Of a stretch of DNA of 64,000 bases, positions 6-19,497 are shown piece by piece. Position numbers and translations under genes: made by a program. The notes beneath the pieces are model-generated. The model did no database searches and was not told the DNA's origin. It was given only the letters and a program-made list of their open reading frames with translations. The stretch is taken from contig OZ316899.1 of NCBI GenBank assembly GCA_973895155.1, positions 1,139,573 to 1,203,572 on the forward strand, read 5' to 3'. Every line of letters starts with the position of its first letter. The first letter of the stretch is position 1. Source of the DNA: Marsupella aquatica (lineage: Eukaryota > Plantae > Marchantiophyta).

Positions 6-1143
6 TTGAGACGAGTGTACATGGGGAAGCAGGCTTCACCCAAGAAGCAAGAGGAAGAGATGCTGCTATTGCGAAATCAGCTACGGGTGCTGAAGGTGGC
101 GATTATGGAAGAGAGTTCAGAAAATGAACTGCAGGAGTACATTGAAACGGAAGACCTATTACACGCAGCGGAACTAGAGGAGGCACATAGAGTAAGACGG
201 CTGGAAAGAATCAAGTGGCTGGGGGAGGGAGAGGAACCCTCTCGATTTTACTTTGCAACGGTAAAGGCAAAGCGGGAACGGGAGGCGATGAAGTACCTAA
301 TGTTAGAGGGAGGGACGGTGATCACAGATGCGGGGATGATAATGAGAGAAGTTGAAAAGGTGTGCATTGAACTGTATGCCCCCGCTGCTCCCACTACTCA
401 TGAGAGGGGAAATACTCTTAGGGAACGTGGCAGACTGCTAGAGCACACTTGGGCTTCTTTATCCATTGCGGAGACTGCAAGGCTGGAGGGGCTGCCAAGC
501 GCTAAGGAAATCCAAGAGGTGCTTTGGGTACTCCCAAAAGATAAAGCCCCTGGCCCGGATGGACTTTCGGTGGAGGTATACCAGGCGTGTTGGGAATTCA
601 TGAAAGAGGATCTGGTCGCCATGGTACAAGAGTTCTGGCTGACTGGGAAGCTGGCAAGTGGGATCAAGGAGGGGACGATTAAGTTCATACCCAAGAAGCC
701 TGATAAGAGAATGCTGAAGGATTGGAGACCTTTAACTATGCTGAACACCATATACAAGCTGATTGCTAAAATATTGGCACTTCGATTAATCAGGATTCTG
801 CCACAACTTATCAGCCCGTAGCAGACGGGCTTTATCCCCGGGAGAAATATTTTGGAAAACATTTCGCTGGCCTGGTTAACCTTTGACTGGCTGAAAAATA
901 GGAAGCATGAGGCACTATTTCTTAAGCTAGATTTTGAGAAGGCGTTCGATAGAGTAGATCATGATTACATATGGGAGACGATGCATCTGTTAGGCATAAG
1001 CAGCAATTTTATTAAATTGGTACAGGCACTGTTGTCAAATTCAACGTCAAGGATTTACCTAAATGGGATGGTATCCACTGAGATTGAACTTAAAAGGGGA
1101 GTCAGACAGGGCTGTCCCCTATCACCGCTCCTGTTTGTAATCT
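6..1143 (+). pseudogene. L1-like LINE ORF2 reverse transcriptase, 5' part (interrupted by CACTA insertion)
   Basis: Motifs KAPGPDG, WRPLTMLNTIYKLIAK, KLDFEKAFDRV and RGVRQGCPLSPLLF are present. One in-frame TAG at 819-821. The frame resumes at 19498. Confidence 0.95.
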
Positions 1144-1154
1144 CACTAGAAGAA
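1144..1154 (+). repeat. Left CACTA terminal inverted repeat
   Basis: CACTAGAAGAA, a perfect 11-bp match to the reverse complement of 19487-19497. Confidence 0.95.
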
Positions 1155-2918
1155 ACCCACCCATTCTGAGACCCTCCCCTATGTGACTTGTGCGAGACCT
1201 TCATAAATATGCGACTCCAAGTTTGTGGGTGTCATGTTAGTTACATCATACCAACTAAGTTTTGGTGAGGTTGTGGGAAGTCATGCTTACAACTTTATCC
1301 AATGTCGCTATTGTAACACTGGTAAGTAAGAAATAGGTAAGTTATGTTAGTTACTCCACAATAGTGCAATATGAATTGGACATCATTTTTTAAAATTCTG
1401 TCAGCATGCATACCCCATTAGCCAATTTCAGATGCCAATCCCTAATATGCAACTCCCGGTGCAACTACATATTGCACACTCATGGTTCAATAAGTCCAAA
1501 TATAATGGGTATAAATATGGGGGTTTTCATCAGAATGGTGGGTACTTTCACTTATAATGTGGATTCATACCTGACTATATTTGGCCTTGTTCTTGACCAA
1601 AGTGCACTCTCCCCACATTGAACTTTTTGCTAAGTCATTTGCATTGGTTCTTTTATGTCCAAACCAACCTGTTTGCTAAGTCACTCGATGGCTGCCCACA
1701 TGTGAGGGGTACTACTTTCCCTCAGGGTCAGTGTACCTTGGAGGTTGGTTTTGCGAGAGATTTTGGGGGTACTACTTGCCCTAAGTGTTCAGGGTCAGTG
1801 TGCCGCAGAGGTTGGTTTTGCGAGGGAAATTGGGAGTCGACGACCTTCATTCCAGCTGCACTCTTCACGAACTTCCTGCAGGGTCGTTTGAAAGTGTTTG
1901 AGCGCGACTGGACTTTAGGGTGCAAATGTGTTTAGGATTGGGCCTGCTACGAGCATCAGTGTGGAGGTCTGCCAATCAGTTTTGAGGGGAGTCCATTGTC
2001 GCTTTTCAACCTGCTGGTGAGCTAAGCTGCTATTGAGTTTCAAGTGAGAGCTGCCGACTTGGAGTTGAGCTCTACGAGGTGGTGCCTGAGTGTACATCTG
2101 CTCGACATACTTTTGGGAGCTCGTAGTTGGTAGGAGGGCCAAGTCATTGCACAAAAAGTTGCAGCCGTGACAGTGCAAACTAGCTAGGCGGAGGCTGGTT
2201 ACTGCAAGCAAGGCGGAGGATCACTGCGAGCTAGGTGGAGGAATGCTGCGCTGCTTCACATTGTCAAGAGACATGCTACATCGGCCCAAGTAAGGTTGCA
2301 TTGACCTATCTATCTCTATGTCTATAAGGTCCTAACCGATAGTCTGCTTAGTGAGGTCATGCTTTAAGCTACATTTGTGCAATTGATTGTGTCCTGAGAA
2401 GCTTAACCATCACATGGGGGAACGGTAGCGAGAAAGGAGGGGTGGAGCCTGATGGTCGCCAAATATTCAAACAGGGTCGCCTTGCTCGATATTGGTCTCA
2501 TTGTTTTTTGCTACGGTGTGAAGGCGGCGGAGCTTCTAGTCTGACCTTTGAGTGACTTGCGGTGAGCTTCTAGTGTGGCTATTGAGGTCGACTGACCTGC
2601 ATTGACCGAGCTGATCAACCTACTGAGCTGCCATTGGGAGTTGGAGGTTGTGTTGCGTTTGATTTTGGAGTCGGGAGGCTAAATGCGATAGCTCTGTTCC
2701 GGGCTCTGTTCAGCTAATGCAGACATTTCTGCTCAGGAGACGAGGTAAAATCTATCGACCTTCAAGCTGCTGTGAGGTTCATTGAAGAGGGAGGTTGAAT
2801 GCCTAGCGCTATGAGGTGAGGAAGGAGAGTATGGCCAAGCTGCATCTTTAGGGGTTTTGCTTCAGCTTCAACCATCTTTCATCGTCGTAATCGCTGCTCT
2901 CATCTATCGCTACATGGT

Positions 2919-3962
2919 GGATTGCTGCTCTGCCCTTTTGGCATGGGTCGCCGACCTGCTGGATGCTATCTCCAGTTTAAAAACAAGTCATATCCTAAGT
3001 CCCGGTGTTGCAGTAGTGTCCCCGACTCTAAGATGGAACAGAGTATCATCTTTCTTGTTTCCTGCTGTTGCTGATGTATGTCTGTTCTCCCCTATTTTTG
3101 CTTACTGATTGGTCTCTCCACACTTCTTGCTTGACTTGCTGCTTCCTTCAATCCCCTATCGCGGACTCACCTCGTGGCTGCAAGTATAGTTGTCTAGGTG
3201 ATGTATGCATTGCGTGTTTAGGGTCTAGGTGACATCGTTGCTGAGCAAAATTCGCGAGCTGCCTAGGTCCATTGTCGAATGCTGCTTCCTTCAATCGCCT
3301 GGTGCCTGCTGTTACAATCGCCTGCTCAATCATGCACCCAATCTCCTGGAGCTCATTCGCCTAGAGCTTCATCCGTCAGATTCAAACTATTATTGGACCT
3401 CCCTATTGCCCGAAGTGTATACACTCCTAGCATTGTCGTCCCAAACTGCAAAACGCTTCTCCCTGTTCTGTCCTCGTGCTTCACTATTTGTATTCAGGTG
3501 TTTTTATCAGTTTCAGAGGGGAGGTCATTGTTTTTGCAAGTTGTTGGTGAGCTAAGCTTCCGCTGTGTGTAGGTTTAGGGAGTTGCGCGTGCGAGCTAAC
3601 GACTTGGACCTGAGGCCACAATCTTTTAGGGAGCTTGGAGTGGAAGCCGACAACTTGGAGCGGGACTTCAACTTGCTATTACTAGCTACCTTGGACAAAG
3701 GTGACAGTCAGTAGCGCAAAGGTGAGACTCGGTAGTTTTAGCGGATTGCTGCTCTGCCCTTTTGCCATGGGTCGCCGGCCTGCTGGATGCTACTAGCAGA
3801 TTAAGAACAACTCATATCCTAAGTCCCGGTGTTGCAGTGGTGTCCCCGACCCTAAGATGCCACCCGAAATCATCTTTCTTGTTTCCTGCTGCTGCTGATC
3901 ATGTATGTATGTTCTCCCCTATTTTTGCTTACTGATTGGTCTCTCCACACTTCTTGCTTGAC
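2919..3962. repeat. ~220-bp internal direct repeat (2919-3135 and 3743-3962)
   Basis: Both copies run from GGATTGCTGCTCTGCCCTTT to CTCTCCACACTTCTTGCTTGAC with scattered substitutions. Confidence 0.9.
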
Positions 3963-5802
3963 ATGACTGTTTTGCTCCTCCCTGTATCAGAACATGCCTT
4001 GTGCCCCGTGCTCTGGCAATGGGGTGGGGGGGGTGAACAGACGGCCTTAAGGTCCACTAAATTTATAGGAACCGTGCAATCGTTCAGCTGATTTTAGCAG
4101 CAAGTTCCCTTGCTTTCCCCTGTTTTTGCTAAGATCCCTCCCCACTAATCACATGCATCTTTTACTTTTCTCGGTGGCCCGTGCACCTGCCTTCCTACTT
4201 TCGTTCTTATGGACTTTCCTTAGGTTTTCTTTCACCTGATTTTGGACTTTTTGCTCCGGTGGAATCTGTCTTGACAACTTGTGTTTGTTCTAATTGTTAA
4301 TATCTCAAGAGGGTCGTCAACTAAGCTCACAGGAGTCAAAGCTAACTACAAGCTAGCAAATAGGGAGAATGCTCCCAAGTCGAGTCAGGAGGAAGTTACT
4401 AAAACTAGACCTTCAGAACTCTCAAAACTGGAAAGTGAAATTCAGCCTGAGACACGCAGCTGAAGGCCACAAGGATAACTATATGGCCACGCTGTCCCTC
4501 ATTCAAGTCCAAAGTCCTCTTCAGATTGTCTGAACTCCTATCTGAACTCCTGAACTGGATGAAGTCCTGTCTGAATGTGAAGTTCAGATTGACAATCTCA
4601 AATGGCAAGTTCTGAACTCTTGTCTGAACTTCATCCACCCTTCTAAACTGGGATTTGTGCTATGTGTATAGACTCCACATTGTTGCTTCTCCCTTTCGGG
4701 CCAGCCCTCCTTGTGAAACGTAGGAGCACGATCATGGCACTTACACATAGTCTGACATTCAAAAAATGCTACTTCTCAGCAGCATGTTTCGAGTAGTTTG
4801 CCTGTGTGTTGAGCCCGGGGTTGAGCCTAATTATTTGTTTATTGCTTTAGTAACATGCATGGCCAATTGGTTTCTCTTCATGTAAAGGCAAGTTTTTGAA
4901 ACTTACTACTTGAATTGGTGGTTTGAATTTAGTTAAGTGTTGAGAAATTAGCATTCACACTAACTATTTTTCTTTTGTGATTGAGTTCTCTTTGCTATTG
5001 AATGTATTGAATAATTATTTCATCACAGAAATTTTCAGAACAAACACGGAAGCACCCGGGGGCTGAGGATTGGATATTGAGGCTGAAGACATTGAGGTAA
5101 TAAACTGGGTGTGGTTCGGGTGACAATGTTAGCAACTGGTGCTTCTTCAGGGGAACTTCCCATGTGCAATTTATCCACACATGATTGACTTTGGTTCTTG
5201 CTATTTTTCTTTTGGTGTACTCTTCAGTTTGGTGTCACTCTATCCTTTCCTATAGCCTCGAAATAGGAACACACCTGCTTAGTGGTCCCCAATTGCCCAA
5301 TGATTTATAATGACTGTGTCTAGGCGATGTATGCATTGCGTGTTCATTCCAGAAGAATGAATATGTACACTTTGCACAAACCTGGACAGATTTTGAATGT
5401 TATTTATCTGAGTTTCTGTTTGTGAGCTCTGACTTGGAGCCTTAACATTTGTGTTTCTGTGGGGTTGAGCAGAGTTTGTTCCGTCCAGAAGCTGCTGTAC
5501 TGAAGTGATCGGCCTCCGGCTTGGAGGTGAATCTTCAATTTTTTCTGGATCCGAGTGACTTCTGTCCAGCTGAGTTTTGCTTTGTCGGGACGATTGTGTT
5601 TGGCTAAGATGCTAGATTGTGGCTTGTCTTCTTGCTTCCAGCTTGTGTATATTCAATTAATAGAAGTTGGGAACGAAGTGATAATTGAATTTCCTTATAT
5701 TAAGCATCTTGACCTAGAAACTCAATACATAAACTCCTGGAGTCCCTCGGGACATAAAATGAGCCAAATTGTTTCAAAATTGGGAACCTGCACCCGCACT
5801 AC

Positions 5803-6142
5803 TCAAACAAATGTGTTGGGCTTGGTGGCCTTGTAAGTCGTCTTTAGCTTTCGCGATGGAGGTTGAATCTTGCGGTACGTCAAGGGGAACTTGATCTTTG
5901 AATCATGGAACTGCTTGGTACTTTCTCGCTTGCACAGAGAGACAGGGACTGTCGTAGTCTTGATGATCTGGATGCAAGGGAACCGAACTCTATGACAAGA
6001 AGCCATCTCATCATACATCTGCTGTGTGGTTGTTTAATGTGGTATCACGATATTTCTTGTACATGTTGGGATAACCTGTACAACTCTGATACCTCACCCA
6101 GATACCGAAGTTCTTAATTGTGGTGGGCTTCTTTTCGAAGAT
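5803..6142 (-). pseudogene. RPL18A: Captured last exon of 60S ribosomal protein L18a (eL20), frameshifted
   Basis: [37 protein letters not shown], then a shift near 6022-6031, then [72 protein letters not shown]. Preceded by a CAG splice acceptor (6145-6143) and followed by a T-rich 3'UTR-like stretch. Confidence 0.92.
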
Positions 6143-7151
6143 CTGGTAGGCACATTATTCAGCATTTGCTAACTTCGAAACTAGAAGGGTAACACATTAA
6201 ACAACAGAGAAACTCACAACATCCTCCTTTGGTCCTTCAGAGTCTGTACTTTGATTATGAAGTTTGACTGAGTTTCTGTTTACTGAAAGAATGTGACTGT
6301 GTAAGAGTTCCGTTTGGCAGTGGATTGGTTGAAGCACTTCATGCTAGTGTGTTGTCCACAGCTCTTCAACCAGCTTTCGTCTTCCTTGTCTTTCACCACT
6401 TACGATGACATCAATTCAGCTAAGACCATAGAAGGTTCCAAAGCATCTAACTTGTAAAATCACATTTTGTTACATCAAGGACTAAGGTGTTCGGTGCCAA
6501 AGGAGACAGCACAACAAACACGCTGAAAAGACTTCAGGACTGGGTTCAACAAGGTAGTGAAGGTGCTTAGAGCCATAGTAAGTATGCATTCTGTATCTTT
6601 CTTTGTTGATGTGAGCTTGTGCATAATGGGAGTTGTAGTTGGCAAGAGTTCCAAATATGAATAGATCCAGAAGTATGTGATCATGTACTTGCTCTATAAA
6701 GTTCTGAAGATATAAGCATTTTCTGTTAGACCAGGCAACTTGGGAGTTGGAAAGTGTCACCTGCATCTGAGGGGCTACACCGGGGGCATCAGTGGAGGTT
6801 CACTTGCACAACACGACAACCAGTGAATTTTCTCTCTGCTGCAACCTGCAAGGTGAGACTTTCGGTCTTTCTGGATGAAAAAACAGGATTTTAATATGAT
6901 TGATATACATGTCCGTCGAGAATATGGGTTTATCACCAAGCTCTTTGTCTTAGGAAACTCATAAACTCAGAATCAAATATGTACTATGCACGTTTCATGC
7001 TATGTGTATACTATGACCTGTAGTTGGAACCAAGACAATGAGTGGGAACTGATTAGTTTAGGTGGTTGCTGTTGGCGAGGCAAGTCGACCTCTTGCTCAC
7101 CTTGCTCATCAAAGGACGTGAACAGAGGACATCACAACGAAAGCAACACTT

Positions 7152-7601
7152 ATGGTGAGGACCCGCAACGCTGAACATGTGCGACTTGCACGCAAGGCAG
7201 AGATGTTGCACCTTGAGTATGTCAGACTTGGGATCCTTCCAGCCCAGTCTGCATGGTACTTTGAGTACCCTGTTGTTTCCAGGAACAACTACAGCCGGCC
7301 TCTACCTGCTTCAGTACCCTTCCCGACATCCTTGGTATTTGTGTCTCTTGTACATGACCCGCCACAAATTAGGTGCCAAGGGTGTGTACACAGTTGCCAA
7401 TATGACTGTCCTGCCTGTAGGGCTTCTGGCCCAGAATTGGATGACCGTTCTCTTGGATGCCGATTTTTGCACAGAGCACAATGTATCATCTGGAACCACT
7501 CGCCATCCTGCAGTGTGCCTGGTGATGTCACTTGTCCTGCCCTCCTAGACCCCACCACCGGTGACTTTGGTGTCTACACATGTTTGGATCACATGCTCTA
7601 G
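7152..7601 (+). CDS. Cys/His-rich hypothetical protein, possibly Zn-binding
   Basis: ATG-initiated 149-aa ORF with CQGCVHSCQYDCPAC and further Cys/His clusters. Family not recognised. Confidence 0.4.
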   Translation: MVRTRNAEHVRLARKAEMLHLEYVRLGILPAQSAWYFEYPVVSRNNYSRPLPASVPFPTSLVFVSLVHDPPQIRCQGCVHSCQYDCPACRASGPELDDRSLGCRFLHRAQCIIWNHSPSCSVPGDVTCPALLDPTTGDFGVYTCLDHML

Positions 7602-8218
7602 AGGACCACTTGTCACACCGCATGCACAGACCAGATACCATTGACCTATAGCTTAACACTCTGACTTCAACACAGAGGATATTTACTTAAAATTTTGATG
7701 TATGAGCAATTTTGGGTCCAGGGTTTAGGGTCAACAGTACATAACTTATATCCTATTATGCCTGCACTAAGCAAAATATCCTAATTCAAGAGGCTAGCAA
7801 ACTCGCATAAAAGTCTCTATTGAAAGACTGCTTTCATGACTGCTTTAACCTGGTGAACATTGCAACGTTCAATGAATTAATGGGCCATGTGATAACCTGT
7901 AAAATGTGATTTATGCATCACTTATTTGTCTCAGCCACTATCATAGCCTATTTAGGATGTATAAATTTCAACCCTTATGACACTGCTTCATACCAATCCT
8001 CTTCGAAGAATGCCTGTTTTACATGTCACGACTATTGTATGTGATTCAAATGCATGAAATGTTGTTGCAGATCTCCTTTGGTGAATCATAGCCACAATTA
8101 AAATTGAGGTGTTGGTGGAGCAATTGTATTAGGGGATCAGGTTTGTGTGTGGGCTCAACATACCAAAAGTATGTCTGCTCTGCATCCTTGTGTGGCCATT
8201 CCAATTCATTGCAGTAGC

Positions 8219-8362
8219 AAATGCCTTTGTACCTTAAATGCTAAATATATTTTACTTTCTGTGCAGTCTGCTAAATTGTAGAGTCTATCTAAATGCCTTT
8301 GTACCTTAAATGCTAAATATATATTACTTTCTGTGCAGTCTGCTAAACTGTAGAGTCTATCT
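8219..8362. repeat. 72-bp tandem duplication containing a splice-acceptor-like tract
   Basis: AAATGCCTTTGTACC...GTGCAGTCTGCTAAA(T/C)TGTAGAGTCTATCT occurs at 8219 and 8291. Confidence 0.9.
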
Positions 8363-8373
8363 CATGCGCAGGC

Positions 8374-9054
8374 ATGGCACGACCTAAAATTCAAGCCAAA
8401 AAGCGTGTGACAGAGGTGAGAAACACAGGTGTACTTGGGGCAGATGCTACTAACTTCTCTGCAAGTCAGATTTTCCAGAAGGCAGCTCATTGTTGTGCCA
8501 TTTGTGACGATGGTGGGGGCCTGGTCATTTGTGAGGGCCCTTGCATGAGGCATTTCCACCTCAACCCGGAGTCTGACCTTGCTGTAGAAAACAACTGTCC
8601 AGGGGTGGGCCTCCCGTCAACACACCAGGGAGACTGGATGTGCACTGATTGTTTGGAGAAGCAGGCTAAGTGTGCACAGTGTGGGAAGTTGGGGTCCTAT
8701 GAGGGCTCTGTTGATGCTGCAGCAAATGTTAGGAAATGTCCAGACCGTTTTCGTGTGAGATTTTTCTATTTTGAGTGTTTGCCTGTTCATGCCACAGCTT
8801 GCCCACTTCATAGGTGCAAGGCATGTGGTGAGCATGATCATGAGTACTGGACTGACATAGTCCACTGTGCTAGGTGTCCCACCATGTGGCACTATCATTG
8901 CCTGAAAGATTGTCAAGCAGAGGGTTATGCTTGTGATAGAGAAATCTATGATCACTCTGCACATGGTGTTGATCGATGGATATTTTATTGTCATCGCCAT
9001 GCCATTGATCCTACCTCGCGCACTCCTGTGAGAGATCACATATCTTGGCTGTGA
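8374..9054 (+). CDS. EDM2-like composite (NSD-type) PHD-finger protein without other domains
   Basis: CAICDDGGGLVICEGPCMRHFH, WMCTDC, CAQCGKLGS, CPLHRCKAC, CARCPTMWHYHCL and C-terminal YCHRHAIDPTSRTPVRDHI parallel the EDM2 PHD region as I recall it. Basic N-terminus KIQAKKRV. Confidence 0.8.
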   Translation: MARPKIQAKKRVTEVRNTGVLGADATNFSASQIFQKAAHCCAICDDGGGLVICEGPCMRHFHLNPESDLAVENNCPGVGLPSTHQGDWMCTDCLEKQAKCAQCGKLGSYEGSVDAAANVRKCPDRFRVRFFYFECLPVHATACPLHRCKACGEHDHEYWTDIVHCARCPTMWHYHCLKDCQAEGYACDREIYDHSAHGVDRWIFYCHRHAIDPTSRTPVRDHISWL

Positions 9055-9646
9055 AGCTGAACATTGTACATGCACAGTGCACCTGATGTGGATGTACTAT
9101 TTTTGGAGATTGCAGAGATTCCAATTTTGAAAAGGAGTTGGGTAGGCGAGTTTATATAGGCAGCACTTATCTTGTGCTCTGGCGTCAGTGGCTGGGTACA
9201 TGCCTATAAAAACTTATCCTTACAAGCCTTCTTGGAAGTATTTAGGCTGAGTGGTCATTTTCATAAACACTTTCATCAGACTGCTAAATTAAAACAGGAC
9301 TTCTAAGTTGTAAGCGTATAAATTATCAGGCATGCGATTAATCAAATTGCCCTATAAGTTTGTCATTGAACGTATCCTCCTTTACAACAAAATATGTATG
9401 TGCCATGACAAGTTGGTTGCACTTCATTTCACCTTTGATATGGATTTTGTAGTATATATTCAAACAATGTCCTGCATCCGTGCAGGTGCCTAGTACGTAT
9501 TGTTCACACATCCCTTGTACCTATCAAAATCGGACCTGAGCACCAGTGGGCCAGATCAACTCAAAAAGCAGGAATTTTGTTGTCCTTGTATTGTCAGGTG
9601 AACCCATTCTTCCAAAATTCACTGTCATCACGTAGGGTGTGTGTAC

Positions 9647-10519
9647 ATGGAGCCTGGGAAACGTAGAAAGTGTGACCACCCAGCAGTGTTTACAGGGGTC
9701 AGAGCCATTTTGGTCCATGGCCAGCATGGGTTGACCAAAGTGCATTGGCCAACTGTACAGAAATGATTCTCTGAGCTCCATGGCACTGTAGTTCAGGACA
9801 TCACTCCAGAGACTACACATGTTGTTGCAGGGACATGGCTATCAGTGATAAAGAAGTGGTCATGGTCCTACATGAATTCTGCAATTACTAAGCAAGGCCT
9901 AAAAGTAGTTGAGGCCTCTTGGATCACAGATTCCATAGCACATCAGATTGTACAGGATACTGAGCAATATGAGCTGTGGGAGGATGAAGAAGCTACTGCA
10001 TCAGCTTGGGCTGAACAAGAAGTCTGGGAAGCAAAGGCACGGCTTGCTGATGTCCAATATGGACCTGTACTCAACAAAGGACAGAGCTCTAGAAGGCTGA
10101 AGAGTATGTTGGCTGAGGAGACGAAGCAACCAACCCCCATTCTGAAAGGGCTGAGCATGGTATTTGTGGAGGCGGGAATTGGAGAGGTTAAGTGCAAAGT
10201 GTACAAGTCCACGGTGCTTGACCTAGGTGGGACAATGGAGGAGAATATAACAGAGGACACCACTCATGTCATTACTAAGTCATATCCCAAAGCCTGCCGC
10301 AAGTTTGGGAAGGGAGACATTCGCTTTTATGTCATGTCCCATAATGTGTTTGTGGTTTCATATGCTTGGCTTGTGGAATCAGTAGCAGCTGGGAAGTGTC
10401 AAAACCCAATGGACTATGATCTTTTTGAGGCCTGGCCACGGAAGGGTCAGGATCCTTACAGAGAGGACTATGAGACAACAAGTGAGGAATGGGTCATTAG
10501 CGATTCTGAATCAGAGTGA
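9647..10519 (+). pseudogene. Tandem BRCT-domain protein (DNA polymerase lambda-type BRCT), one internal TGA
   Basis: ATG at 9647 (MEPGKRRK). BRCT1 VFTGVRAILV...THVVAG...SWITDSI is interrupted by TGA 9764-9766. BRCT2 is ILKGLSMVFVEAGI...LGGTMEE...THVI...KFGK...SYAWLVESVAAGKCQNPMDYDL. Confidence 0.8.
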
Positions 10520-11051
10520 GGAGTAGTAGCATCAGTTTGGACACAAGTTTTTTTGTATAAATCAGATCATTGAAATAAATGTGATCTTTGAACTAATGTA
10601 CCTTGTTATGGTTGGTGGCAGTTGGGCTTATTTTACTGTTGGCGGATTGTTGTTTCCTGCTGCCTGGGGGTGTCACTGTAAACGTACTGGGTGGGCTCAA
10701 ATCTCAGCGGTGAGATATCTGATACCGCTCTCACACCTATGCCTATGACTATACATGATTGGACTCTGATATGGTTATGGGTGTACATGCAGAGGCGGTA
10801 CATTTGAGGACAGCTGTGGAGGTGGTGACACCCTCAAACATTGAGGAATTTTGTGTCATTCACTTGACAATAGGTACACTACTCGCAAACCTGTTTTTTT
10901 CTTTTGGGGTGGTTTAGGGTTTGTGAGAATTTATTACACGTTATGTTAACTCTTTTGGCACATACAGTCAGGGATATATGGAACACAAATACCACCATTA
11001 GGCATCCCTGTTCACTGCTGTCCATGACTGCAGAGCTTCCAGCCTGTTACA

Positions 11052-14000
11052 ATGCACCCTGGTCACCACCCTCCCCAAACCCAGCCCAGGGCACAGGCAC
11101 TGCCTTTGCATCATCCCACAAGGATATCACGCCATGATAATAAGCTTTGGCAGCGTGAAAGGTTACGAACCAGACTTTCAGGAGCCAGTAGGATGAGATG
11201 TCCTTGTGCAATCTGCCAAGGATCCCGTACCAGGGGTCTGAATGAGGTTTGGCGGCATATCGCGGTTCATGGAAGAGATCCACGACATCGAGTTTGGAAT
11301 GATCCTGTAGAGGAAGATTCTTCCGACGAGGAGTGGAGGTTAGAATTTGATGCTGCCAATGCTGCAAGACGGGCAAGTGAGGTTCTGCCTGGTGCATTTG
11401 AAAATGTTGTAGCTGGTCTCTGTGGGTTGTCAGCTCTCCAACGGGATGGTCAGGCAGCACCACGTGACGAAGGAATTCATGTGGAAGAGATGGTGAGAGA
11501 CATCTTCCAAGACTTGGATGCATTTCATGATGGGCTGGACAACGAAGAGGATACAGCTGCAGATGCAAGTGTGCCCCCTGTCGAAGAGCCTCTTGATGAG
11601 TTTGAGATAGGGCAGGAAACCCCTGGGCATGATGGGATGTTTGGCTCTCCCCTGCAAATACAGGAAGGCAGGAAGTCTTTGTACCCCGGTAGCAAATGTT
11701 CTAAACTGGGATTTGTCATCATGTTCCTGAACATTTGCGGCAACCACAATGTCCCCAACGTTTTGGTTTCTGAGTTGTTGGCATTCTTGCAAACAACTGT
11801 GCTACCAGATGGTAATATTTTGCCCAAGAACATGTACGAGGCAAAAAGATGCATATCTAATCTTGGATTGAACTATGATTCAATCTATGCCTGTCCTGAT
11901 GGGCATGTTCTTTTCAGAAAGGAGTATAAAGAATCGTTGACATGCCCTAAGTGTGGGAAGCACAGGTATCGGAACTCAGGAAAGTCTATGGTTCCCGCCA
12001 AGGTACTTCGTCATTTTCCACTCATTCCTAGACTTCAGCGGATGTTCAGAAGCCGTGCCATCTCGGAGGTGATGACTTGGGCAACTGACAAGAAAAGTGA
12101 TGATGGGCTACAACGACATGCTGCAGATTCAAGGCAATGGAAACTCATAGATGAGATGTATCCCGAATTTGCTGCTGAGCCGAGGAATGTCAGACTTGGG
12201 CTGTCATTGGATGGGGTAAACCCATTTGGAGACAAGAACAACAAATTTTCGTGCTGGCCTGTAACTATTTTGAATTATAACCTTCCTCCTTGGATGACTA
12301 CAAAGCGATTTTTTGTTCTGATGGTCCTACTGATACCAGGGCCAGACAGTGTTGTATCTGCCAACATAGATGTGTTTCTGGCTCCCCTAGTGGAGGAATT
12401 GAGAAAGCTTTGGGAGGAAGGAGTTCTCACATATGATGTCCTATAGAGGCTTGGGAGGTTAAACCCATTCATCCTTAGAGCCATTGTCATTCTGACTATA
12501 GCTGACTACCCAGCCCATGGGATGATATCAGACCAAACAACAAAAGGATATTGTGCTTGTACTATCTGTGGGCACAATGTCACCAGTGAGTACTCCAGAG
12601 CCCTGCAGAAAGTGATATACATGGGCCATCGTCGTTTTCTGAAGGCAGATCACCCTTACAGAGAAAGACAGGCACTGATTGCACACTTTGGCAATGAGAT
12701 TGAGCAACGTGGACCCCCGGCACGAGTGACCAAAGAGGAGATCAGGCAGTGGGGAGCACTGAGGGATGACTATATCAAACGAGGGGGCAGGGAAGATGGA
12801 GTGAGTGATCCAATAAAGCGATATGGTGTAAAAAGACTGAGCATATTGGACTTGGAGCTCAAGTACTGGAGGGTAAGCCTCTTGGAGTTGATGCTAATTG
12901 GGATACATGTTTTGGTTCAGAGCATGTGCATTCATTTCGAAGAGAGAGACTAAACTTGAGGCATTTCCTGACGCTTTTGCATTGCAACGATGCAGGAGTT
13001 TGAGCCAAGCAAACATAACATTGATGTTATGCACATTGAAAAGAATATTTGTGAGAGTCTACTCAGATTCTTGTGTGGAGAGAAAGACACTGGTTCAGTG
13101 AGATTGGATCTTGAACAGAGGGGAATGAAACCCCATCTTTGGTTGAGGCCACATGCCCACAGAGCTGATGTGCTCTTGAAGTACCAAGCGCCCTATGTTC
13201 TGACAGACACAGAGTGGGAACTATTTGTGCAGAGGTTGAGTTCTTTGAAGGTTCCTTCAAACTATGGCAATGCTTTCAAGAAGCATATCATGACTAGAAA
13301 GCTTGGTAGTATGAAAAGCCATGACTACCATATGTTGATGCAACAGGTGTTGCCTTTATGCCTGAGGGGCCTGTTGCAGAAGCCTGTTCGTACTGTGATC
13401 ATGCGACTCAGTGATGTGTTTCGTCATATTTGTGTGAAGGTTTGGGATGAAACACACTTCCCACAACTGACAGAAGATGTCGCTCAGGTGCTGTGTGACC
13501 TGGAGATTTATTTTCCTCCCGCATTTTTTGATGTCATGACCCACCTACTTGTCCATGTTGTGGAAGAGCTACACCAATTTGGGCCTGTGAGTGCTCGTTG
13601 GTTGTACCCTTTGGAACGGTACATGAAGCTACTCAAAGGTCACGTGAGAACATATTACAAACCTGAAGCAAGCATGGCTAAAGGTTACATCAAGGATGAG
13701 ACTCTGGGATTTCTGACCGAATACATAGCACAATATGAGCATGTGAAGACCAGGGTGTGGAATTCTGATGAGGAGGAAGGGGTGATAGGTGAAGTACTGG
13801 AAGGGGCTGCAACCACAAAGAACCTGACCATATCTATGAGAGACTTGGCACATGACTTTGTATTGCACAACACTGTGGTGATGGAACCCTGGATACAGTG
13901 AGTGCATACATGTGCTATAATCCAGTTCATGAGCTTAAATGTTGTGTTCGTGTGGTTTTCTCCTTTAGCCTATTCATGTTTACCCAAGCTAATGCTGTGT

Positions 14001-14780
14001 GGTTGTTCGTTCAGGGAGTATGAGTCATTGAAGGCGGCCCATCCCACTGCAGGAACAACTTTTCCAGGTTTCATGGAGTGGATCAGAGTGGCAATTAGAG
14101 AGCATCACGAGACCCACCCAGACATGGATGCAGATGTTTACCTACTGTCTAATGCCCCTAGCCTGAAAGTGAAGACTTACAAACGGATGAGAGCATATGG
14201 GAATCACTTTCGAGTGAAGGATGGTGACAGTGCCTACAGGGTGACGAATGACTTCGGGATCATCACTGTATTTGAGCAACAGAGCCACAATCACGATAGG
14301 GCCTGGATGGAGATGGGATATGTGGGAGAATTAGTTGACATATGGGCTCTGGACTATGGGGCGGTGTCCAGTCCTGTGATTCTTATGAAAGGTTCATGGG
14401 TGCGGCAGGATTGGCTTGGTAATAGGGCTACCATGAAGAGAGACAATGACAGTTTCTTGCTCGCCAATTTCAGAGGGAAATTGCCCGAATGGTCTGAGCC
14501 ATTTGTGTTTCCTAGTCAGGTGGAGCAAGCTTTCTTCCTGGATGTGGAAGACTCCCCAGGTTGGCGTGTAGTGTGTCATAAATAGGCCAGGCAACGTCGG
14601 ATGGAAGGATCAAACCTTGAGTTTCATTTACACTCTCATAGTGCCTTTGATCGTCGGCGTTCAGACCAAGTGCCTGTAGTTCATGATAGCGGGGACTTCA
14701 TTCCTGTGACAAGGGTAGATGCATTTGCTGAAGGAGGCGAATTCAGAGATGCAGATGCCAACAGTGTGCCTGTACCATGA
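11052..14780 (+). pseudogene. CACTA TnpD-like transposase (transposase-associated domain, Transposase_21, DUF4218, DUF4216)
   Basis: Motifs CPCAIC, LSLDGVNPF, HNIDVMHIEKN, KSHDYH, FFDVMTHL and WLYPLERYM. Introns at 12873-12995 and 13898-14014. Premature TAG at 12444 and 14583. Confidence 0.93.
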
Positions 14781-14934
14781 GTAATGTGAATTGTTTGCAT
14801 GGACATTAGTGAGGGGAAGGATGTGTAATAAAGTAATTCTGAAGCAACACAGATGTATGGATGGATGCCTGGTGATTGTGGTTGCATTGTGTTATACGGG
14901 GTGATCATAGATGACATGTTTTTGTGGTCCAGTA

Positions 14935-17900
14935 GGATGGAACAGAGTGACACAGAGATGTGTGAGTATGAAAGGAAAGCTATGGAACAACGAGCATACG
15001 TGAAAGCCAAAATCGCAGAACTGGATCTGGAAAAGGATGTGGCTGAATTGTAAGGGAACGATTCTCAACTACACCCCTCCGCTGAGTTTGTGTGACATGA
15101 ATAGTTCAATGTGGCACTGAAATTGTGACTGTATTCTCATATTGGAATGTCGCAGAGCCACAGCATTTTCAAAGAAACAAAAGGAGTACGCAAGAAGGGT
15201 GACCAGCACTATCTCTGGGCCTGTGCGTCGGAGTGACAGGTTGAGCAAGAAGGTCGTACCTACAATGGCAGAATGTGGAGATGACATTGATGCTGCACAG
15301 GTGGGTGCAGACACTAGACAAGAAGATGCAGATGATGAGTATTTTCCAGAGGAAATGGATGAGGATGGGGGTTATGAAGATGAATACATTGCAGAGCAGC
15401 CCCAAAAGAAACAGGTAAGTAGTTTTCCCAACAAGGTTTTGAGTTAAAAACTCTTGTTTAGAGGTTTCATATGTTCAGTACTACACATATGTACCTTGCT
15501 TAGTTCCTGACATTGTAGTTGGTGATGTGATGCAGCGTCCTGCCAGTTCTGTTTTGCCTTCGAAGCCTGTGCATGCACCATACCAGCAGGGGGGGCTGAC
15601 CTCTGATCAAGGTTGGCAAGGTGGTAGTAGTGGTAGATCCCAGGCTGGTGCCCAATACTATGGCAGGGGGCAAGCTCTAGGTTATGCCCGTGGTAGAGGC
15701 AGAGCAGGTCCAAACCCACAATCTCGTGGGTATGGACGTCCACCTCAACCATGGGGATGTGAGTATATATCTATATGCCAGTTCTTTGTGAAGGCATGGC
15801 ACTCCTGAATTTCAGACTGCATATCAATTTTTGACATTGTTTGGGATGTATTGGATTCAGACAACATGAAATTCTGTCCACCTGCCATGCAGGCAGATTC
15901 TGCCCAACCTGATTGGGCAAATGCTAGTAATGATCAGTTCCAATGTCCACAAGGACAGACATGGGTTGAACCAGGTTGGGAGGATGGTGGTGGGTCGTGG
16001 AATGAACAAGGTTGGGAAGGTGGTGAAGGTAATTGGCAGGGATATCAAAATACAGTACCTACAAACGCTGGAAGAGGGGCAGGTAATGTCTGATCTTGTC
16101 AGCAATGGAAGAACTCATTATATCTGGAGTCCATTCACGTGGGGGGGACTCTGCACATGTATAATGATAGAAAATGTATGTGTGCAGGTTGGACAGTCGA
16201 ATCATCGACTCAAGTATTCACTAATGCCCCTATGCAGATGCAGCACGGAAGGGGGACAGGTATGTTGGTGAATGTTCAGTTGTTTTCCTACAGTTTGTAC
16301 TTAGTTTTCAGTACATATGTTTGCACACACATACCTAGAAAGTGACATCATCCGGCCCCTGTACTAGGCTGGACAGGTGGTCCAGGGTCGCAACAATTTC
16401 AGAGTGTAGTCCCTGCACAGGCATCTACAGGCAGAGCTACAGGTATGTATGTTTGAAGAATTTTTCTTGAAGTGAAGCATTGAATGTTGCCGTCATCCAT
16501 TCTGCTATATGTAGTTCTCAAGCATGAATGGCATTGTATTTTCCCAGGTGGCTTCAGAACCCCAGGTAGGGTGAATGAAGGGGTGGCCAATACAACGCCC
16601 AGTACTACCGAGAGCAGTGCACAAGGGGAGGTGACAAAGAAAGGGAACGTAAAGTTGAATGAGAGACAATGGGTGGATGCTGAGTGTCCTCGCAAGAACC
16701 GATGGCATGCTGATTTGAAAGCTAAAGTATTGCGTTGGTTAGATGTGAGTGTTATTAATTTTAAAAAACAGCATCCAAAAGATTGGAAGACTGTATGTGA
16801 AAATGTTGCTGCCAAATGGAATTATGTGGGCAGTGATGATGGCGTGGACATAGGTTGCCTAGAGAGTACAGCAGGTAAAATCATCAAGCAAGAGAGGTGG
16901 AGAATGCATAAGGCTTGGAAGGAAGGTGGGGAGAAGCCAGATATGCCTCCACCAGCCAGTTGTGATAATAAAGTGTGGGCAAGGTTAGTAGCTTATTTTG
17001 TAACAGATGCTTCAAAAAAGAAGAGTTCACAGATGACCGAGGCCAGGTTGAGTGTTCAGAACCCTAATCTGACAGGAAGGACCGGCACTGCACCGACAGC
17101 TAAACGTTTGGTAAGAATGAATGGCCTAGCTATGTAATTTATGCTACACTATGTACTGTTTTTTAGTGTAAACCCATACATGTAAAATTTGTTTTTTAGT
17201 GTACGTTCCCTGAATATTGATCGATAACTTGTGTTTGCCATGCATGTGCAGAAAGCCCAATTGGGGCAAAGCCCTTCAAAAGAAGAGTTGAGGGCTGAAA
17301 TTGTGAACACCCGGGCTCAAGAGGGTGCATCTGAATCCTCCAAGCATGTAAATTATATGAGTTCTGATTGGTAATTGAATGACCTGCGTTGAATTTCAGG
17401 TGTACACTGTATATAACATTGATTGTGCATATATTGCCCAACATTTCATATGGAGTGATTGAACCTATACCCCTGTGTCATGTAGGGAGGTGGATCTTCA
17501 CTTACAGAGATAAGTGGTCGTTTGAAGGCTGTCGAAACATGTCTTCCAGAGATCAATGAACGTTTGAATTCATTGACTGACTTGTTCCATGTGAACTTCA
17601 AGACATTAATGGAAGCTGTTGTGTCGGTGAGAGATAAAATTGATTCCAATTCTGCAGGAGTTCCACCATCACCACTTGAGGTGGCAAAGTCGATGCACTC
17701 TTCTGGCATGCCAACGACATGTAGGCTTGAAGGTAAGGCCTTTACAACTGTGTGGGATATGATTATTAAATGTATAGTTTGAATTGACATTGTTTGTTGA
17801 ATGTGTTATTTTTAGTAACATATATTGTGGTTGTTGTGTCCATAGAGAATAAGACAGGTGCTACAGAGAAGAAGTATGAGAACCTGGCAAATACTCGCTG

Positions 17901-18642
17901 TAATTTAGAGGCAACAAAGTTGCAGTCTGTAGAAGCAACTTGTTTGATAGAGGGCAGTCAACCATGTTTGGATGAGGATGACATTGGCAAGGGAGTGGAT
18001 GATATCAATGTTGGGGCAAATGAGGATATCAGCAAGCATGACAATGATACCATTGAGCCAGATTCATGCTATGTAGATCTTGACTCCATTGCAGAGATAA
18101 ATGATTTGCAGAATGTATCATTCTCAATGACAGGTGTGCCTCTTGTTGAGATAAATCCAACCAAAGAGTTAGTTGGTATGACACTCCCAGGTGATGAACC
18201 TGCTACTATGACAGTCCTAACAGAGGAACCTACTGAGCCTAGCTTCACTACTGTGAAGAGAGGAAGCATGCGCACATGAAGCAAGTCTGCTGGTGGGAGC
18301 AGAGCCACGTCAAAGGTTTCATACAAACCTCCAAGAATGGTGCTGGCAGAAAGATCTAAGGTGGAAGTGGGGAAAGTACCTAATGCTGAGGGACAAAGTG
18401 GCTTGTTAGCTCTTGATGAGAGTGGAACACGAGTAGGATTTGGCAGAGTGCAGGTTGGTTCCACAACGTTCCATGGCAAGAGGATTCCCCCAGGTTATTC
18501 AGTAGTGTTAGTCACATTACTAGTGAAACCTAAAGCTATCCTTCCCATTCCAAACACAAATGATGATCCTCCTCAAAAGACACTTGGAGATGCTGCAGGT
18601 TCTTTGGTATTATGGCCAAGCAAGTTCATAGAGGATCCATAA
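14935..18642 (+). pseudogene. Multi-exon CACTA TnpA-like gene (Transposase_24-like middle, Tnp1/EnSpm-like C-terminus)
   Basis: VWARLVAYFVTDASKKKSSQMTEAR exon (16484-17137) and terminal FHGKRIPPGYSVVLV...GSLVLWPSKFI exon (18337-18642). Many GT..AG pairs. Exact exon chain not resolved. Confidence 0.75.
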
Positions 18643-19139: not shown

Positions 19140-19470
19140 GTTGTGTGACGCGGGCCAGGGTCTCCATTGGTCTCTCCTGTGACACTAAATGGTCACACGC
19201 TAGTCGTTGTTGAATGCGGGTAAGTCATGTATGTGACTTACGATGTGACTCGCTGAAGTCATATTGCAGTCACGTCGAAACAAGGCTAGACTCCACAATA
19301 AAGTCACAAATCAATCACAAATGGGTATCAAGCAAGTTGCAAAGCCCAGTATCAATAGTGACTTCCATTTTTTGGTCTCAACTTTTGCAACTCCAAGGGT
19401 CACAGCGTGGGTCAAGTCACGTTGAGTCACAATGAAGTCACATGAGCCAAAATGAGTCACATATTGCGGT
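19140..19470. repeat. CACTA subterminal repeat cluster (GTCAC/GTGAC in both orientations)
   Basis: Dense TGTGAC, AGTCAC and GGTCAC copies just inside the right TIR. Confidence 0.75.
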
Positions 19471-19486
19471 CTCAGTTCACCTCGGA

Positions 19487-19497
19487 TTCTTCTAGTG
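19487..19497 (-). repeat. Right CACTA terminal inverted repeat
   Basis: TTCTTCTAGTG followed by the TSD TCT. Confidence 0.95.

What the first reader, a model, noticed from the sequence alone, without database searches (positions are those of the whole stretch)
8374..9054. Transposon-borne stand-alone EDM2-like histone reader
Seen: an intronless, open 226-aa ORF made almost entirely of the composite PHD module, ending in YCxxHxID...TPVRDHI, which I recall as EDM2-specific. The middle finger reads C-PDRF-R-VRFF-Y-FE-C, so two likely Zn ligands are substituted, consistent with decay of this copy. Known: EDM2 reads H3K9me2-containing marks and acts with ASI1/IBM2 and AIPP1/EDM3 to allow full-length transcription through intronic heterochromatin. 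Inference: a reader-only protein could be a decoy or adaptor that helps the intron-containing transposase be transcribed through heterochromatin.
Basis: partly seen in the sequence, partly recalled or inferred. Interest (0 to 1): 0.85.

Follow-up and report, generated by a model that had tools for sequence, protein, structure and literature searches.

The report
Transposon-borne EDM2-type PHD reader gene
An 18-kb plant CACTA transposon carries, next to its transposase, a small gene consisting only of the triple zinc-finger histone-reading module of the host factor EDM2; the gene family is old and kept by selection, but this copy has lost two zinc-binding cysteines.

Summary
Positions 8374-9054 (+) are an open, intronless 226-codon ORF made of three PHD-type fingers. 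It ends in YCHRHAIDPTSRTPVRDHISWL.

It lies inside a CACTA element (1144-19497) with CACTA inverted repeats and a 3-bp TCT target duplication. Removing the element restores a LINE reverse-transcriptase ORF.

"EDM2-like" is supported:
- The nearest long relatives are proteins named ENHANCED DOWNY MILDEW 2.
- The ORF aligns with A. thaliana EDM2 over the whole module.
- Both predicted structures match EDM2 best.
- A family profile scores EDM2-likes at 110-152 bits and NSD2/3 at about 50.
- A dictyostelid-rooted tree puts the transposon clade inside streptophyte EDM2-likes.

The gene is a long-standing cargo, not a one-off capture:
- About 220-residue relatives share its start and stop.
- They keep the order PHD, BRCT, transposase at 43% identity.
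- dN/dS is 0.2-0.4.

This copy is damaged. R127 and Y132 replace cysteines found in every relative and every other contig.

The proposed function (decoy or adaptor for read-through of heterochromatin) is untested, because I obtained no RNA or binding evidence. First-stage notes report the same family in at least eight other windows of this genome. I found no paper describing such cargo.

The parts
8374..9054 (+). 226-codon ORF: a stand-alone EDM2-type triple-PHD protein, here a mutated copy. Residues 1-38 are a basic, poorly conserved tail; residues 39-225 are the module.
   Evidence: BLASTP to A. thaliana EDM2 residues 225-432 gives 29% identity, E 1e-24. Fold match to EDM2_ARATH has TM 0.62.
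8494..8652 (+). Finger 1 (residues 41-93), canonical C4HC3, all eight ligands present.
   Evidence: Pfam PHD-1st_NSD E 5.8e-5. Ligand columns are invariant.
8671..8811 (+). Finger 2 (residues 100-146). The family pattern is C4-C-C2H, with Cys132 where EDM2 has His. In this copy two ligands are lost.
8752..8754 (+). Codon 127, CGT (Arg). Every relative and every other contig has TGT (Cys).
8767..8769 (+). Codon 132, TAT (Tyr). Every relative and every other contig has TGT (Cys).
8815..9000 (+). Finger 3 (residues 148-209), variant C5HCH-type finger, all eight ligands present.
   Evidence: Pfam PHDvar_NSD E 3e-3.
8986..9048 (+). C-terminal extension YCHRHAIDPTSRTPVRDHISW, shared with EDM2-like proteins.
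   Evidence: The NSD match of the family profile stops at position 169 of 217.
8219..8362 (+). 72-bp tandem duplication (2 copies, 97% matches) directly upstream of the ATG.
1144..1173 (+). Left terminal inverted repeat, CACTAGAAGAA...
19468..19497 (+). Right terminal inverted repeat, ...TTCTTCTAGTG.
1141..1143 (.). Target-site duplication TCT (left copy); the right copy is at 19498-19500.
9845..10519 (+). BRCT-domain ORF, the next gene downstream in the same element.
   Evidence: Pfam BRCT_2 2.1e-10. Homologous to the BRCT ORF of L008, E 4e-20.
11052..14585 (+). TNP2/TnpD-type CACTA transposase in four consecutive ORFs (Transpos_assoc, Transposase_21, DUF4218, DUF4216).
16484..17137 (+). Possible TnpA-like ORF (weak Transposase_24 match).
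   Evidence: E 2.9e-4, below Pfam's cut-off.
852..1143 (+). Left half of the LINE reverse-transcriptase ORF split by the insertion; the right half is at 19501-19820.
   Evidence: RVT_1 E 4e-15. The joined flanks translate as one ORF.

Best explanation
SHOWN. The ORF is one copy, damaged in finger 2, of an accessory gene of a lineage of plant CACTA (En/Spm) transposons.
- The family gene encodes a protein of about 220 residues: a short basic tail plus the complete three-finger PHD module of the EDM2 type.
- It lacks EDM2's N-terminal RFD-like domain. It ends about 870 residues before EDM2 does, so it also lacks whatever lies in EDM2's C-terminal part.
- The module descends from a streptophyte EDM2-type gene.
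- It has stayed for a long time directly upstream of the element's BRCT gene and TNP2 transposase.
- It has been under purifying selection.
- The window copy acquired C127R and C132Y after it diverged from the family consensus.

INFERRED.
- Identity as a histone-tail reader working in trans for the element family (about 0.6). By analogy with EDM2, whose PHD module binds H3K9me2-containing marks (PMC7529245), the intact protein is a nuclear histone H3-tail reader.
- Most likely downstream effect (about 0.3). It sits on the heterochromatin that covers the elements and keeps them usable. It would sustain transcription and processing of the long multi-exon transposase unit (EDM2-like anti-termination) or blunt silencing. 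It would work through partners encoded by the element (BRCT protein, TnpD, TnpA) or through host ASI1/AIPP1-type proteins.
- The window copy itself probably makes no working protein, because both zinc sites of finger 2 have lost a ligand.
For: Element:
- CACTA inverted repeats.
- TCT/TCT target duplication.
- Excision in silico restores one LINE RT ORF.
- TNP2, DUF4218 and DUF4216 domains.

EDM2 type:
- The long hits are named ENHANCED DOWNY MILDEW 2 and carry DNMT1-RFD plus PHD_NSD.
- BLASTP to A. thaliana EDM2 covers residues 41-225.
- The family profile scores EDM2-likes at 110-152 bits and NSD2/NSD3 at 48-52 bits.
- Foldseek's top Swiss-Prot hit is EDM2_ARATH for both models, TM 0.62 and 0.69. 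NSD proteins reach 0.42-0.48.
- The rooted tree places the transposon clade (100/100) inside the streptophyte clade and excludes chlorophytes at 99/91.

Long-standing cargo:
- L008 has PHD, BRCT, TNP2, DUF4218 in the same order at 43% PHD identity.
- L002 has PHD then a BRCT-like ORF.
- L004 has PHD then the transposase.
- Start and stop positions are conserved.

Selection:
- dN/dS is 0.28-0.39 overall and 0.20-0.27 in the module; none of 500 bootstraps reached 1.
- Downstream non-coding divergence is 0.33, about equal to dS, against 0.11 in the module.
- All 24 ligand columns are conserved.

Decay of this copy:
- Of six well-supported private differences, one is synonymous and five are not; the five include both lost cysteines.
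Against: - There is no RNA evidence that the ORF is transcribed, or that it is translated as a separate protein.
- No histone-binding data exist for this family. The EDM2 module has no solved structure, so binding residues cannot be checked.
- The stem of the transposon clade is long (1.72 changes per column) and its place inside streptophytes is unresolved.
- A reader with no sequence specificity would not by itself favour its own element.
- A protein lacking EDM2's other domains may not reach EDM2's partners.
- Several tree rows counted as streptophyte are unnamed.
Confidence: 0.6

Rival explanations
1. Targeting subunit. The reader tethers the transposition machinery (TnpD, with the BRCT protein) to nucleosomes carrying a particular H3 mark. 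It would steer excision or integration toward chosen chromatin, much as chromodomains of chromoviral integrases steer integration into heterochromatin.
For: - The protein is a bare reader with no effector domain.
- It is conserved next to the transposase and a BRCT protein, a type of module common in DNA-break signalling.
- This copy sits inside another repeat, a LINE.
- Part of the fold resembles NSD PHD-C5HCH tandems solved with H3 peptides.
Against: - No interaction data exist.
- Insertion into a repeat is the default in a window that is nearly all repeats.
Confidence: 0.22
2. Decoy. The reader-only protein competes with host readers of the same mark (EDM2 itself, or H3K9me2 readers that maintain silencing). 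It would act as a dominant negative that weakens host control genome-wide.
For: - It keeps only the reading module and lacks EDM2's other domains.
- The family is highly repeated in the runs laid on it, so many gene copies could contribute.
Against: - Blocking EDM2 would be expected to shorten transcripts that cross heterochromatin, which would hurt the element's own long transcription unit.
- Nothing here tests competition.
Confidence: 0.12
3. Not a separate protein. The ORF would be an exon of a larger spliced product. It might form an N-terminal PHD domain of the BRCT protein or of the transposase, or one arm of an En/Spm-style alternatively spliced unit.
For: - All genes of the element are on one strand, in series.
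- En/Spm makes TnpA and TnpD from one spliced unit (general knowledge).
- AG dinucleotides lie just before the ATG, and a GTGAGA lies inside codons 218-220.
- One contig joint with GT..AG ends lies further downstream, 10773>11192.
Against: - The Met-Ala-Arg-Pro-Lys start and the stop within 0-3 codons of DHISW are conserved in relatives down to 36% identity (P0003 runs 10 residues further).
- The last eight residues are constrained at the protein level.
- An in-frame stop lies 30 nt upstream of the ATG.
Confidence: 0.1
4. A dead transduplicate. The ORF would be a fragment of the host EDM2 gene picked up recently by one element (Pack-CACTA style), with no function for element or host.
For: - CACTA elements are known to capture host gene fragments (general knowledge).
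- This copy carries disabling substitutions.
Against: - The transposon clade is monophyletic, deep and distinct from every host sequence found.
- It has its own diagnostic ligand change, H132C.
- It keeps gene order across elements whose transposases are only 48-50% identical.
- It evolves at dN/dS 0.2-0.4.
- It covers the exact module with its own start and stop.
Confidence: 0.03

Closest known systems
EDM2 (ENHANCED DOWNY MILDEW 2, A. thaliana F4K3G5) and plant EDM2-like proteins
   Same: - The same three-finger module in the same order, with all 24 ligand columns.
- The same C-terminal extension YCxxHxI...TPxRDH.
- 29% identity over 212 residues.
- Best structural match.
- The transposon clade nests inside streptophyte EDM2-likes.
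   Different: - About 220 residues against about 1300.
- No N-terminal DNMT1-RFD-like domain, and none of EDM2's roughly 870 residues after the module.
- Finger 2 uses Cys where EDM2 has His, and the Pfam PHD_NSD model no longer detects it.
- It is encoded by a transposon, not a host gene.
- Binding of H3K9me2 and partnership with ASI1/IBM2 and AIPP1/EDM3 are known for EDM2 (PMC7529245) and unknown here.
NSD1/2/3 PHD clusters (PHD1-3; PHDv-C5HCH tandems such as 4GNG, 2NAA, 9GBF)
   Same: - They share Pfam models (PHD-1st_NSD, PHDvar_NSD).
- They are the best solved-structure relatives by sequence (NSD2/NSD3, E about 1e-12).
- The fold matches in part (TM by target 0.56-0.65).
   Different: - They score about 50 bits against 110-152 for EDM2-likes with the same profile.
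- The match ends before the C-terminal extension.
- The ORF has no SET or PWWP domain.
Transposon-encoded anti-silencing factors: Spm TnpA and VANDAL VANC (from my own knowledge, not checked here)
   Same: They are proteins encoded by plant DNA transposons beside the transposase that act on the element's own epigenetic state.
   Different: As I recall, those are sequence-specific DNA binders with no host-reader ancestry. This protein is a histone-reader module derived from a host chromatin factor, and its activity is untested.
Chromodomain-bearing integrases of chromoviruses (Ty3/Gypsy) (own knowledge)
   Same: They are transposable-element proteins carrying a reader of histone methylation.
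   Different: Here it is a separate small protein of a cut-and-paste element.
Host-derived accessory genes kept by DNA transposons: ULP1-like protease genes in Kaonashi MULEs, and TET/JBP genes linked to KDZ/Plavaka elements in fungi (own knowledge)
   Same: They are host-type genes carried and conserved inside DNA transposons over long periods.
   Different: The cargo differs (an EDM2-type reader, paired with a BRCT gene). I found no description of such cargo in the paper library.

Membership tests
EDM2 / EDM2-like proteins | Composite module of three PHD-type fingers with 24 zinc ligands in EDM2's order. | tested here: met
   All 24 columns are conserved in 11 transposon-family and 29 host modules. 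The window copy itself lacks ligands 127 and 132.
EDM2 / EDM2-like proteins | C-terminal extension YCxxHxI...TPxRDH[IV]x[FW] after finger 3. | tested here: met
   Present in the window ORF, in the family and in about 100 EDM2-like hits, including the representative of the A. thaliana EDM2 cluster.
EDM2 / EDM2-like proteins | Closer to EDM2 than to other PHD families by sequence, fold and tree. | tested here: met
EDM2 / EDM2-like proteins | N-terminal RFD-like domain (Pfam DNMT1-RFD). | tested here: not met
   Found in A. thaliana EDM2 and other long hits. It is absent from the 226-aa ORF, whose module starts at residue 39.
EDM2 / EDM2-like proteins | C-terminal methyltransferase-like domain (PF26055 Mtase_EDM2, named only in an Atlas cluster listing). 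| tested here: not met
   The ORF stops one residue after the module. The local Pfam copy did not report PF26055 even for EDM2, so its absence rests on protein length.
EDM2 / EDM2-like proteins | Binds H3K9me2-containing histone marks; works with ASI1/IBM2 and AIPP1/EDM3. | not testable with these tools
   Known for EDM2 (PMC7529245); no data for this family.
CACTA / En-Spm transposons (the carrier element) | Terminal inverted repeats beginning with CACTA. | tested here: met
   CACTAGAAGAA... at 1144 and ...TTCTTCTAGTG ending at 19497.
CACTA / En-Spm transposons (the carrier element) | 3-bp target-site duplication. | tested here: met
   TCT on both sides. Removing the element and one TCT restores a continuous RT ORF.
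CACTA / En-Spm transposons (the carrier element) | TNP2/TnpD-type transposase. | tested here: met
   Transposase_21 E 1.4e-43, plus Transpos_assoc, DUF4218 and DUF4216.
CACTA / En-Spm transposons (the carrier element) | Second (TnpA-type) gene and subterminal repeat motifs. | tested here: inconclusive
   The Transposase_24 match is weak and below the cut-off. AGTCAC/GTGACT occurs 9 times in the last 270 bp but only about once at the left end.
NSD histone methyltransferases | SET and PWWP domains beside the PHD cluster. | tested here: not met
   Only PHD models hit the ORF.
Pack-CACTA transduplicated host fragment | Recent, copy-specific, neutrally evolving fragment of a host gene. | tested here: not met
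   It forms a deep monophyletic clade with conserved gene order and dN/dS of 0.2-0.4.

The most novel reading that the evidence does not exclude
A lineage of plant CACTA transposons has kept, for a long evolutionary time, its own reader of heterochromatic histone marks. Together with an element-encoded BRCT protein, the elements would use it as an epigenetic counter-measure. It would keep their long transcription units readable, or their DNA accessible for transposition, when the host has silenced them.
Probability: 0.25. Interest if true: 0.8.

Novelty: new variant of a known kind. Interest (0 to 1): 0.6.

Why it matters
Plant transposons are silenced through H3K9me2 and DNA methylation. EDM2 is one of the few host factors known to read that mark in order to keep transcription going rather than stop it.

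A transposon family that owns a selected copy of just that reading module suggests transposons may exploit the host's own way of tolerating heterochromatin inside genes. If so, it would add a histone-reader class to the very short list of transposon-encoded anti-silencing or chromatin-targeting factors.

It also provides a natural minimal EDM2 module for biochemical and structural work; no EDM2 structure turned up in the solved-structure searches.

The specific copy in this window is a damaged member, so the interest lies in the family. Practically, gene annotators should expect such ORFs to be mislabelled as EDM2-like host genes.

Tried and rejected
1. Expression and splicing. Both run searches returned runs of unknown kind. 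Laid on 7300-12900, they behaved like DNA of a highly repeated element: 234-5133 contigs laid per run, with summed word depths up to about 470,000. No transcript structure could be read. A few joints are listed as leads only.
2. Single-sequence search of solved structures found only AIRE and BRD1 PHD fingers at weak E-values. The family profile was needed to reach NSD2/3.
3. Naming the host. Run names are coded. A full-text search for the SRR prefix of the relatives' samples found only unrelated papers. The nearest named transposase is from the liverwort Riccia sorocarpa at only 44% identity. The host EDM2 gene could therefore not be put in the tree.
4. Conserved coding sequence upstream of the PHD gene. 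tblastx of 5500-8373 against the related loci found nothing beyond a weak non-coding match to L006. There is no sign of an upstream exon.
5. The word-indexed protein search, limited to similar lengths, found only 5 relatives with the single ORF and 19 with the profile. The exhaustive search was needed.
6. Literature. Three searches gave no report of a CACTA-borne EDM2-type or PHD-plus-BRCT cargo. One candidate paper (PMC11982613) proved irrelevant. The library is incomplete, so this is weak evidence of novelty.
7. A 40-sequence alignment with the intact relative P0001 gave pLDDT 86.5.
Full report
**1. What is at the coordinates**

Positions 8374..9054 on the + strand hold a 226-codon ORF with an ATG start and no interruption.

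Pfam gives sub-threshold matches to two NSD/EDM2-type models and to the generic PHD model:
- PHD-1st_NSD, residues 39-93, E 5.8e-5.
- PHDvar_NSD, residues 148-179, E 3.1e-3.
- Generic PHD, weak.

The window holds only this one copy (tblastn).

**2. The carrier element**

- The best inverted repeat in the first 24 kb pairs 1144-1173 (CACTAGAAGAA...) with 19468-19497 (...TTCTTCTAGTG).
- Both ends are flanked by TCT.
- The left flank is the front of a reverse-transcriptase ORF (RVT_1, E 4e-15).
- Deleting 1144-19500 joins it in frame to the ORF on the right. The result is one continuous LINE RT sequence...RGVRQGCPLSPLLFVISTQPLMDFM...FADDLGVF....

The element is therefore an 18.35-kb CACTA transposon with a 3-bp target duplication, inserted into a LINE.

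All its recognisable genes are on the + strand:

| Gene | Coordinates | Evidence |
|---|---|---|
| PHD ORF | 8374-9054 | |
| BRCT ORF | 9845-10519 | BRCT_2, E 2.1e-10 |
| TNP2-type transposase, four consecutive ORFs | 11052-14585 | Transpos_assoc; Transposase_21, E 1.4e-43; DUF4218; DUF4216 |
| Possible TnpA-like ORF | 16484-17137 | Transposase_24, E 2.9e-4, below cut-off |

**3. Relatives of the small protein**

A length-restricted search found five proteins of 217-245 residues at 36-81% identity, all from Logan assemblies. The exhaustive search of 1.84 billion representatives found 234 hits at E<=1e-3.
- The top hits are more small proteins. Several are visibly frameshifted, as expected for transposon copies.
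- Intact members begin MARPK... and stop directly after ...DHISW[LI]. P0006 runs three residues past the W, and P0003 runs 10 residues further.
- None of the family members looked up comes from an annotated genome. Their sources are Logan, JGI/IMG and ENA metagenomes.

**4. Is it EDM2-like?**

Named hits:
- After the small proteins come proteins of about 1000-1400 residues matched at about 220-430.
- Those looked up are named ENHANCED DOWNY MILDEW 2 (Neltuma, Iris, Selaginella). One cluster contains A. thaliana EDM2 itself.
- They carry DNMT1-RFD plus PHD_NSD and PHDvar_NSD.

Pairwise alignment: BLASTP of the window ORF against A. thaliana EDM2 aligns residues 41-225 with EDM2 225-432. Identity is 29% and E is 1e-24. 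The alignment runs through all three fingers and ends in YCQEHEIDEELLTPVRDHVKF opposite YCHRHAIDPTSRTPVRDHISW.

Profile scores, using a profile of 13 family members (A2):

| Target | Bits |
|---|---|
| Liverwort EDM2-likes (Calypogeia, Riccia) | 141-152 |
| Arabidopsis-cluster representative | 116 |
| Mesotaenium | 109 |
| Best solved structures, NSD2 and NSD3 | 48-52 |

The NSD matches stop at profile position 169 of 217, before the C-terminal extension.

Structure:
- The AlphaFold model of the window protein (pLDDT 67.7) matches EDM2_ARATH 210-432 best in Swiss-Prot, with TM 0.62 and E 1.3e-11.
- The better model of the intact relative P0001 (pLDDT 86.5, pTM 0.81) does the same, with TM 0.69 and E 1.3e-13. 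A Dictyostelium PHD protein reaches 0.54 and NSD1/2/3 reach 0.42-0.48.
- Among solved structures, only parts match: NSD PHD-C5HCH tandems at TM by target 0.56-0.65, and PZP domains at low TM.

**5. Phylogeny**

- On the module, the transposon proteins form one clade with full support, in a 126-row quick tree and in 48- and 46-row careful trees.
- Look-ups showed that the hit list also holds chlorophyte sequences (Tetraselmis, Ostreobium, Myrmecia, Micractinium, Chlorella) and dictyostelid sequences (Acytostelium, Polysphondylium).
- Rooted on the dictyostelids, the chlorophytes branch first. The transposon clade falls inside the clade of streptophyte EDM2-likes with support 99/91.
- Its position within that clade is unresolved and its stem is long (1.72 changes per column).
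- Long-branch attraction would pull it toward the outgroups, not into the streptophytes, so the placement is conservative.

Caveats: several rows counted as streptophyte are unnamed, and the host's own EDM2 could not be included.

The parsimonious reading is an old capture of a streptophyte EDM2-type module by a CACTA element. Diagnostic family changes are Cys for His at ligand 132, Asp92 for Asn, and Ala98 for His.

**6. A conserved cargo, not an accident**

- L008, a 13-kb metagenome contig, carries PHD (43% identical), BRCT, Transposase_21 and DUF4218 in the same order and on the same strand. Its BRCT ORF is homologous to the window's, at 25% identity and E 4e-20.
- L002 has PHD followed by a BRCT-like ORF.
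- L004 has PHD followed directly by the transposase N-terminus, which is 50% identical to the window's.
- First-stage notes of this scan report the same kind of gene next to CACTA transposases in at least eight other windows of this genome. I did not check those windows. They agree with the very high contig depth and the thousands of 90-99% identical contigs I saw in four public runs.

**7. Selection**

| Measure | Value |
|---|---|
| dN/dS among window copy, L001 and L006 (dS 0.35-0.50) | 0.28-0.39 |
| Bootstraps reaching dN/dS of 1 | 0 of 500 |
| dN/dS, module alone | 0.20-0.27 |
| dN/dS, basic N-terminal tail | 0.4-1.6 |
| Jukes-Cantor distance, 231 non-coding bases downstream (window vs L001) | 0.33 |
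| Jukes-Cantor distance, module (window vs L001) | 0.11 |

The non-coding distance is about equal to dS, which serves as an internal neutral control. More distant pairs are saturated at synonymous sites yet keep open frames of the same length. All 24 zinc-ligand columns are conserved.

**8. The state of this copy**

- The window copy has Arg127 and Tyr132 where ten of eleven family sequences have Cys.
- Every contig covering 8752 and 8768 in four runs reads T and G, which restores TGT/TGT.
- Of the six best-supported private differences inside the ORF, one is synonymous. Five are not: A71V, C127R, C132Y, A138V and D156H.
- That ratio fits neutral drift after this copy left the active lineage.
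- By the canonical PHD cross-brace wiring (established knowledge of the fold, not tested here), ligands 4 and 5 belong to different zinc sites. Both sites of finger 2 would be compromised.

**9. What it most likely does**

- Shown: it is a selected, transposon-borne, reader-only derivative of the EDM2 module.
- Known: EDM2 binds H3K9me2, interacts with ASI1/IBM2 and EDM3/AIPP1, and promotes full-length transcripts across heterochromatic transposon insertions (PMC7529245).
- Inferred: the intact family protein is a histone H3-tail reader acting in trans for its element family (about 0.6).

Targeting of the transposition machinery gets about 0.22, and a dominant-negative decoy about 0.12. Nothing in the sequence discriminates between these.

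A spliced fusion with downstream genes (about 0.1) is made unlikely by the conserved start, the conserved stop and the in-frame stop 30 nt upstream. It cannot be excluded without cDNA. A recent dead transduplicate is contradicted by sections 5-7.

**10. Comparison, novelty and verdict**

- The protein passes the EDM2 tests that concern the PHD module.
- It fails those that concern the rest of EDM2, because it has no RFD-like domain and no C-terminal part. It should be called an EDM2-type PHD-module protein, not an EDM2 orthologue.
- Host-derived accessory genes in DNA transposons, and reader domains in retrotransposon integrases, are known kinds (my own knowledge).
- An EDM2-type reader paired with a BRCT gene in CACTA elements was not found in three literature searches.
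- I rate it a new variant of a known kind, with interest 0.6. The family is worth experiments. This particular copy is a broken member, and the scan has flagged the family repeatedly elsewhere in the genome.

Noticed in passing
window 8219-8362: A 72-bp unit is duplicated in tandem (97% matches) directly upstream of the PHD start codon. One run has a contig that skips 88 bp there (joint 8235>8324), so the duplication may be copy-specific.
   Followed up: partly
window 10773-11192: A contig of run X2 joins 10773 to 11192, skipping 418 nt with GT..AG ends, between the BRCT ORF and the transposase ORF. This could be an intron seen in a processed form or a deletion derivative. The kind of run is unknown.
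   Followed up: no
window 7590 to 8135 / 8354 / 9554: Three contig joints share the same left edge at 7590 and land before or after the PHD gene. The ends are AC..AG and the shorter sides are only 20-24 nt, so this is weak evidence, possibly internal deletion derivatives of the element.
   Followed up: no
window 7152-7601: A Cys-rich 149-codon ORF upstream of the PHD gene has no Pfam hit and no counterpart in the flanks of L004 or L008. It lies in the stretch with the highest contig depth. A first-stage note elsewhere in the genome describes a cassette of Cys-rich ORF, PHD, BRCT and TnpD.
   Followed up: partly
window 852-1143 and 19501-19820: The CACTA element split a LINE reverse-transcriptase ORF. 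Joining the flanks restores one open frame.
   Followed up: yes
window 19228-19497: The hexamer AGTCAC/GTGACT occurs 9 times in the last 270 bp of the element but only once or twice at the left end. These are candidate subterminal binding motifs, distributed asymmetrically.
   Followed up: partly
P0014, P0019, P0024, P0026, P0034 (liverwort proteins of 620-770 aa): A well-supported clade of proteins from Calypogeia, Riccia and unnamed sources carries the EDM2-type module at the extreme C-terminus, with no RFD domain. These give the highest non-transposon scores to the transposon-family profile.
   Followed up: partly
P0043, P0193-P0198 (grass proteins of 325-430 aa): Oryza, Urochloa and Setaria have short EDM2-like proteins made mostly of the PHD module, so host genomes also hold reader-only paralogues.
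   Followed up: no
L004 3648-5691: In this related element the PHD gene is followed directly by the transposase, with no BRCT gene between them. The BRCT gene is therefore not an obligate partner.
   Followed up: partly
window 8422-8982 versus flanks: In runs X2 and X5 the summed contig depth over the PHD coding region is several-fold higher than over the adjacent non-coding DNA. This is expected if diverged subfamilies still match only in the conserved gene.
   Followed up: no
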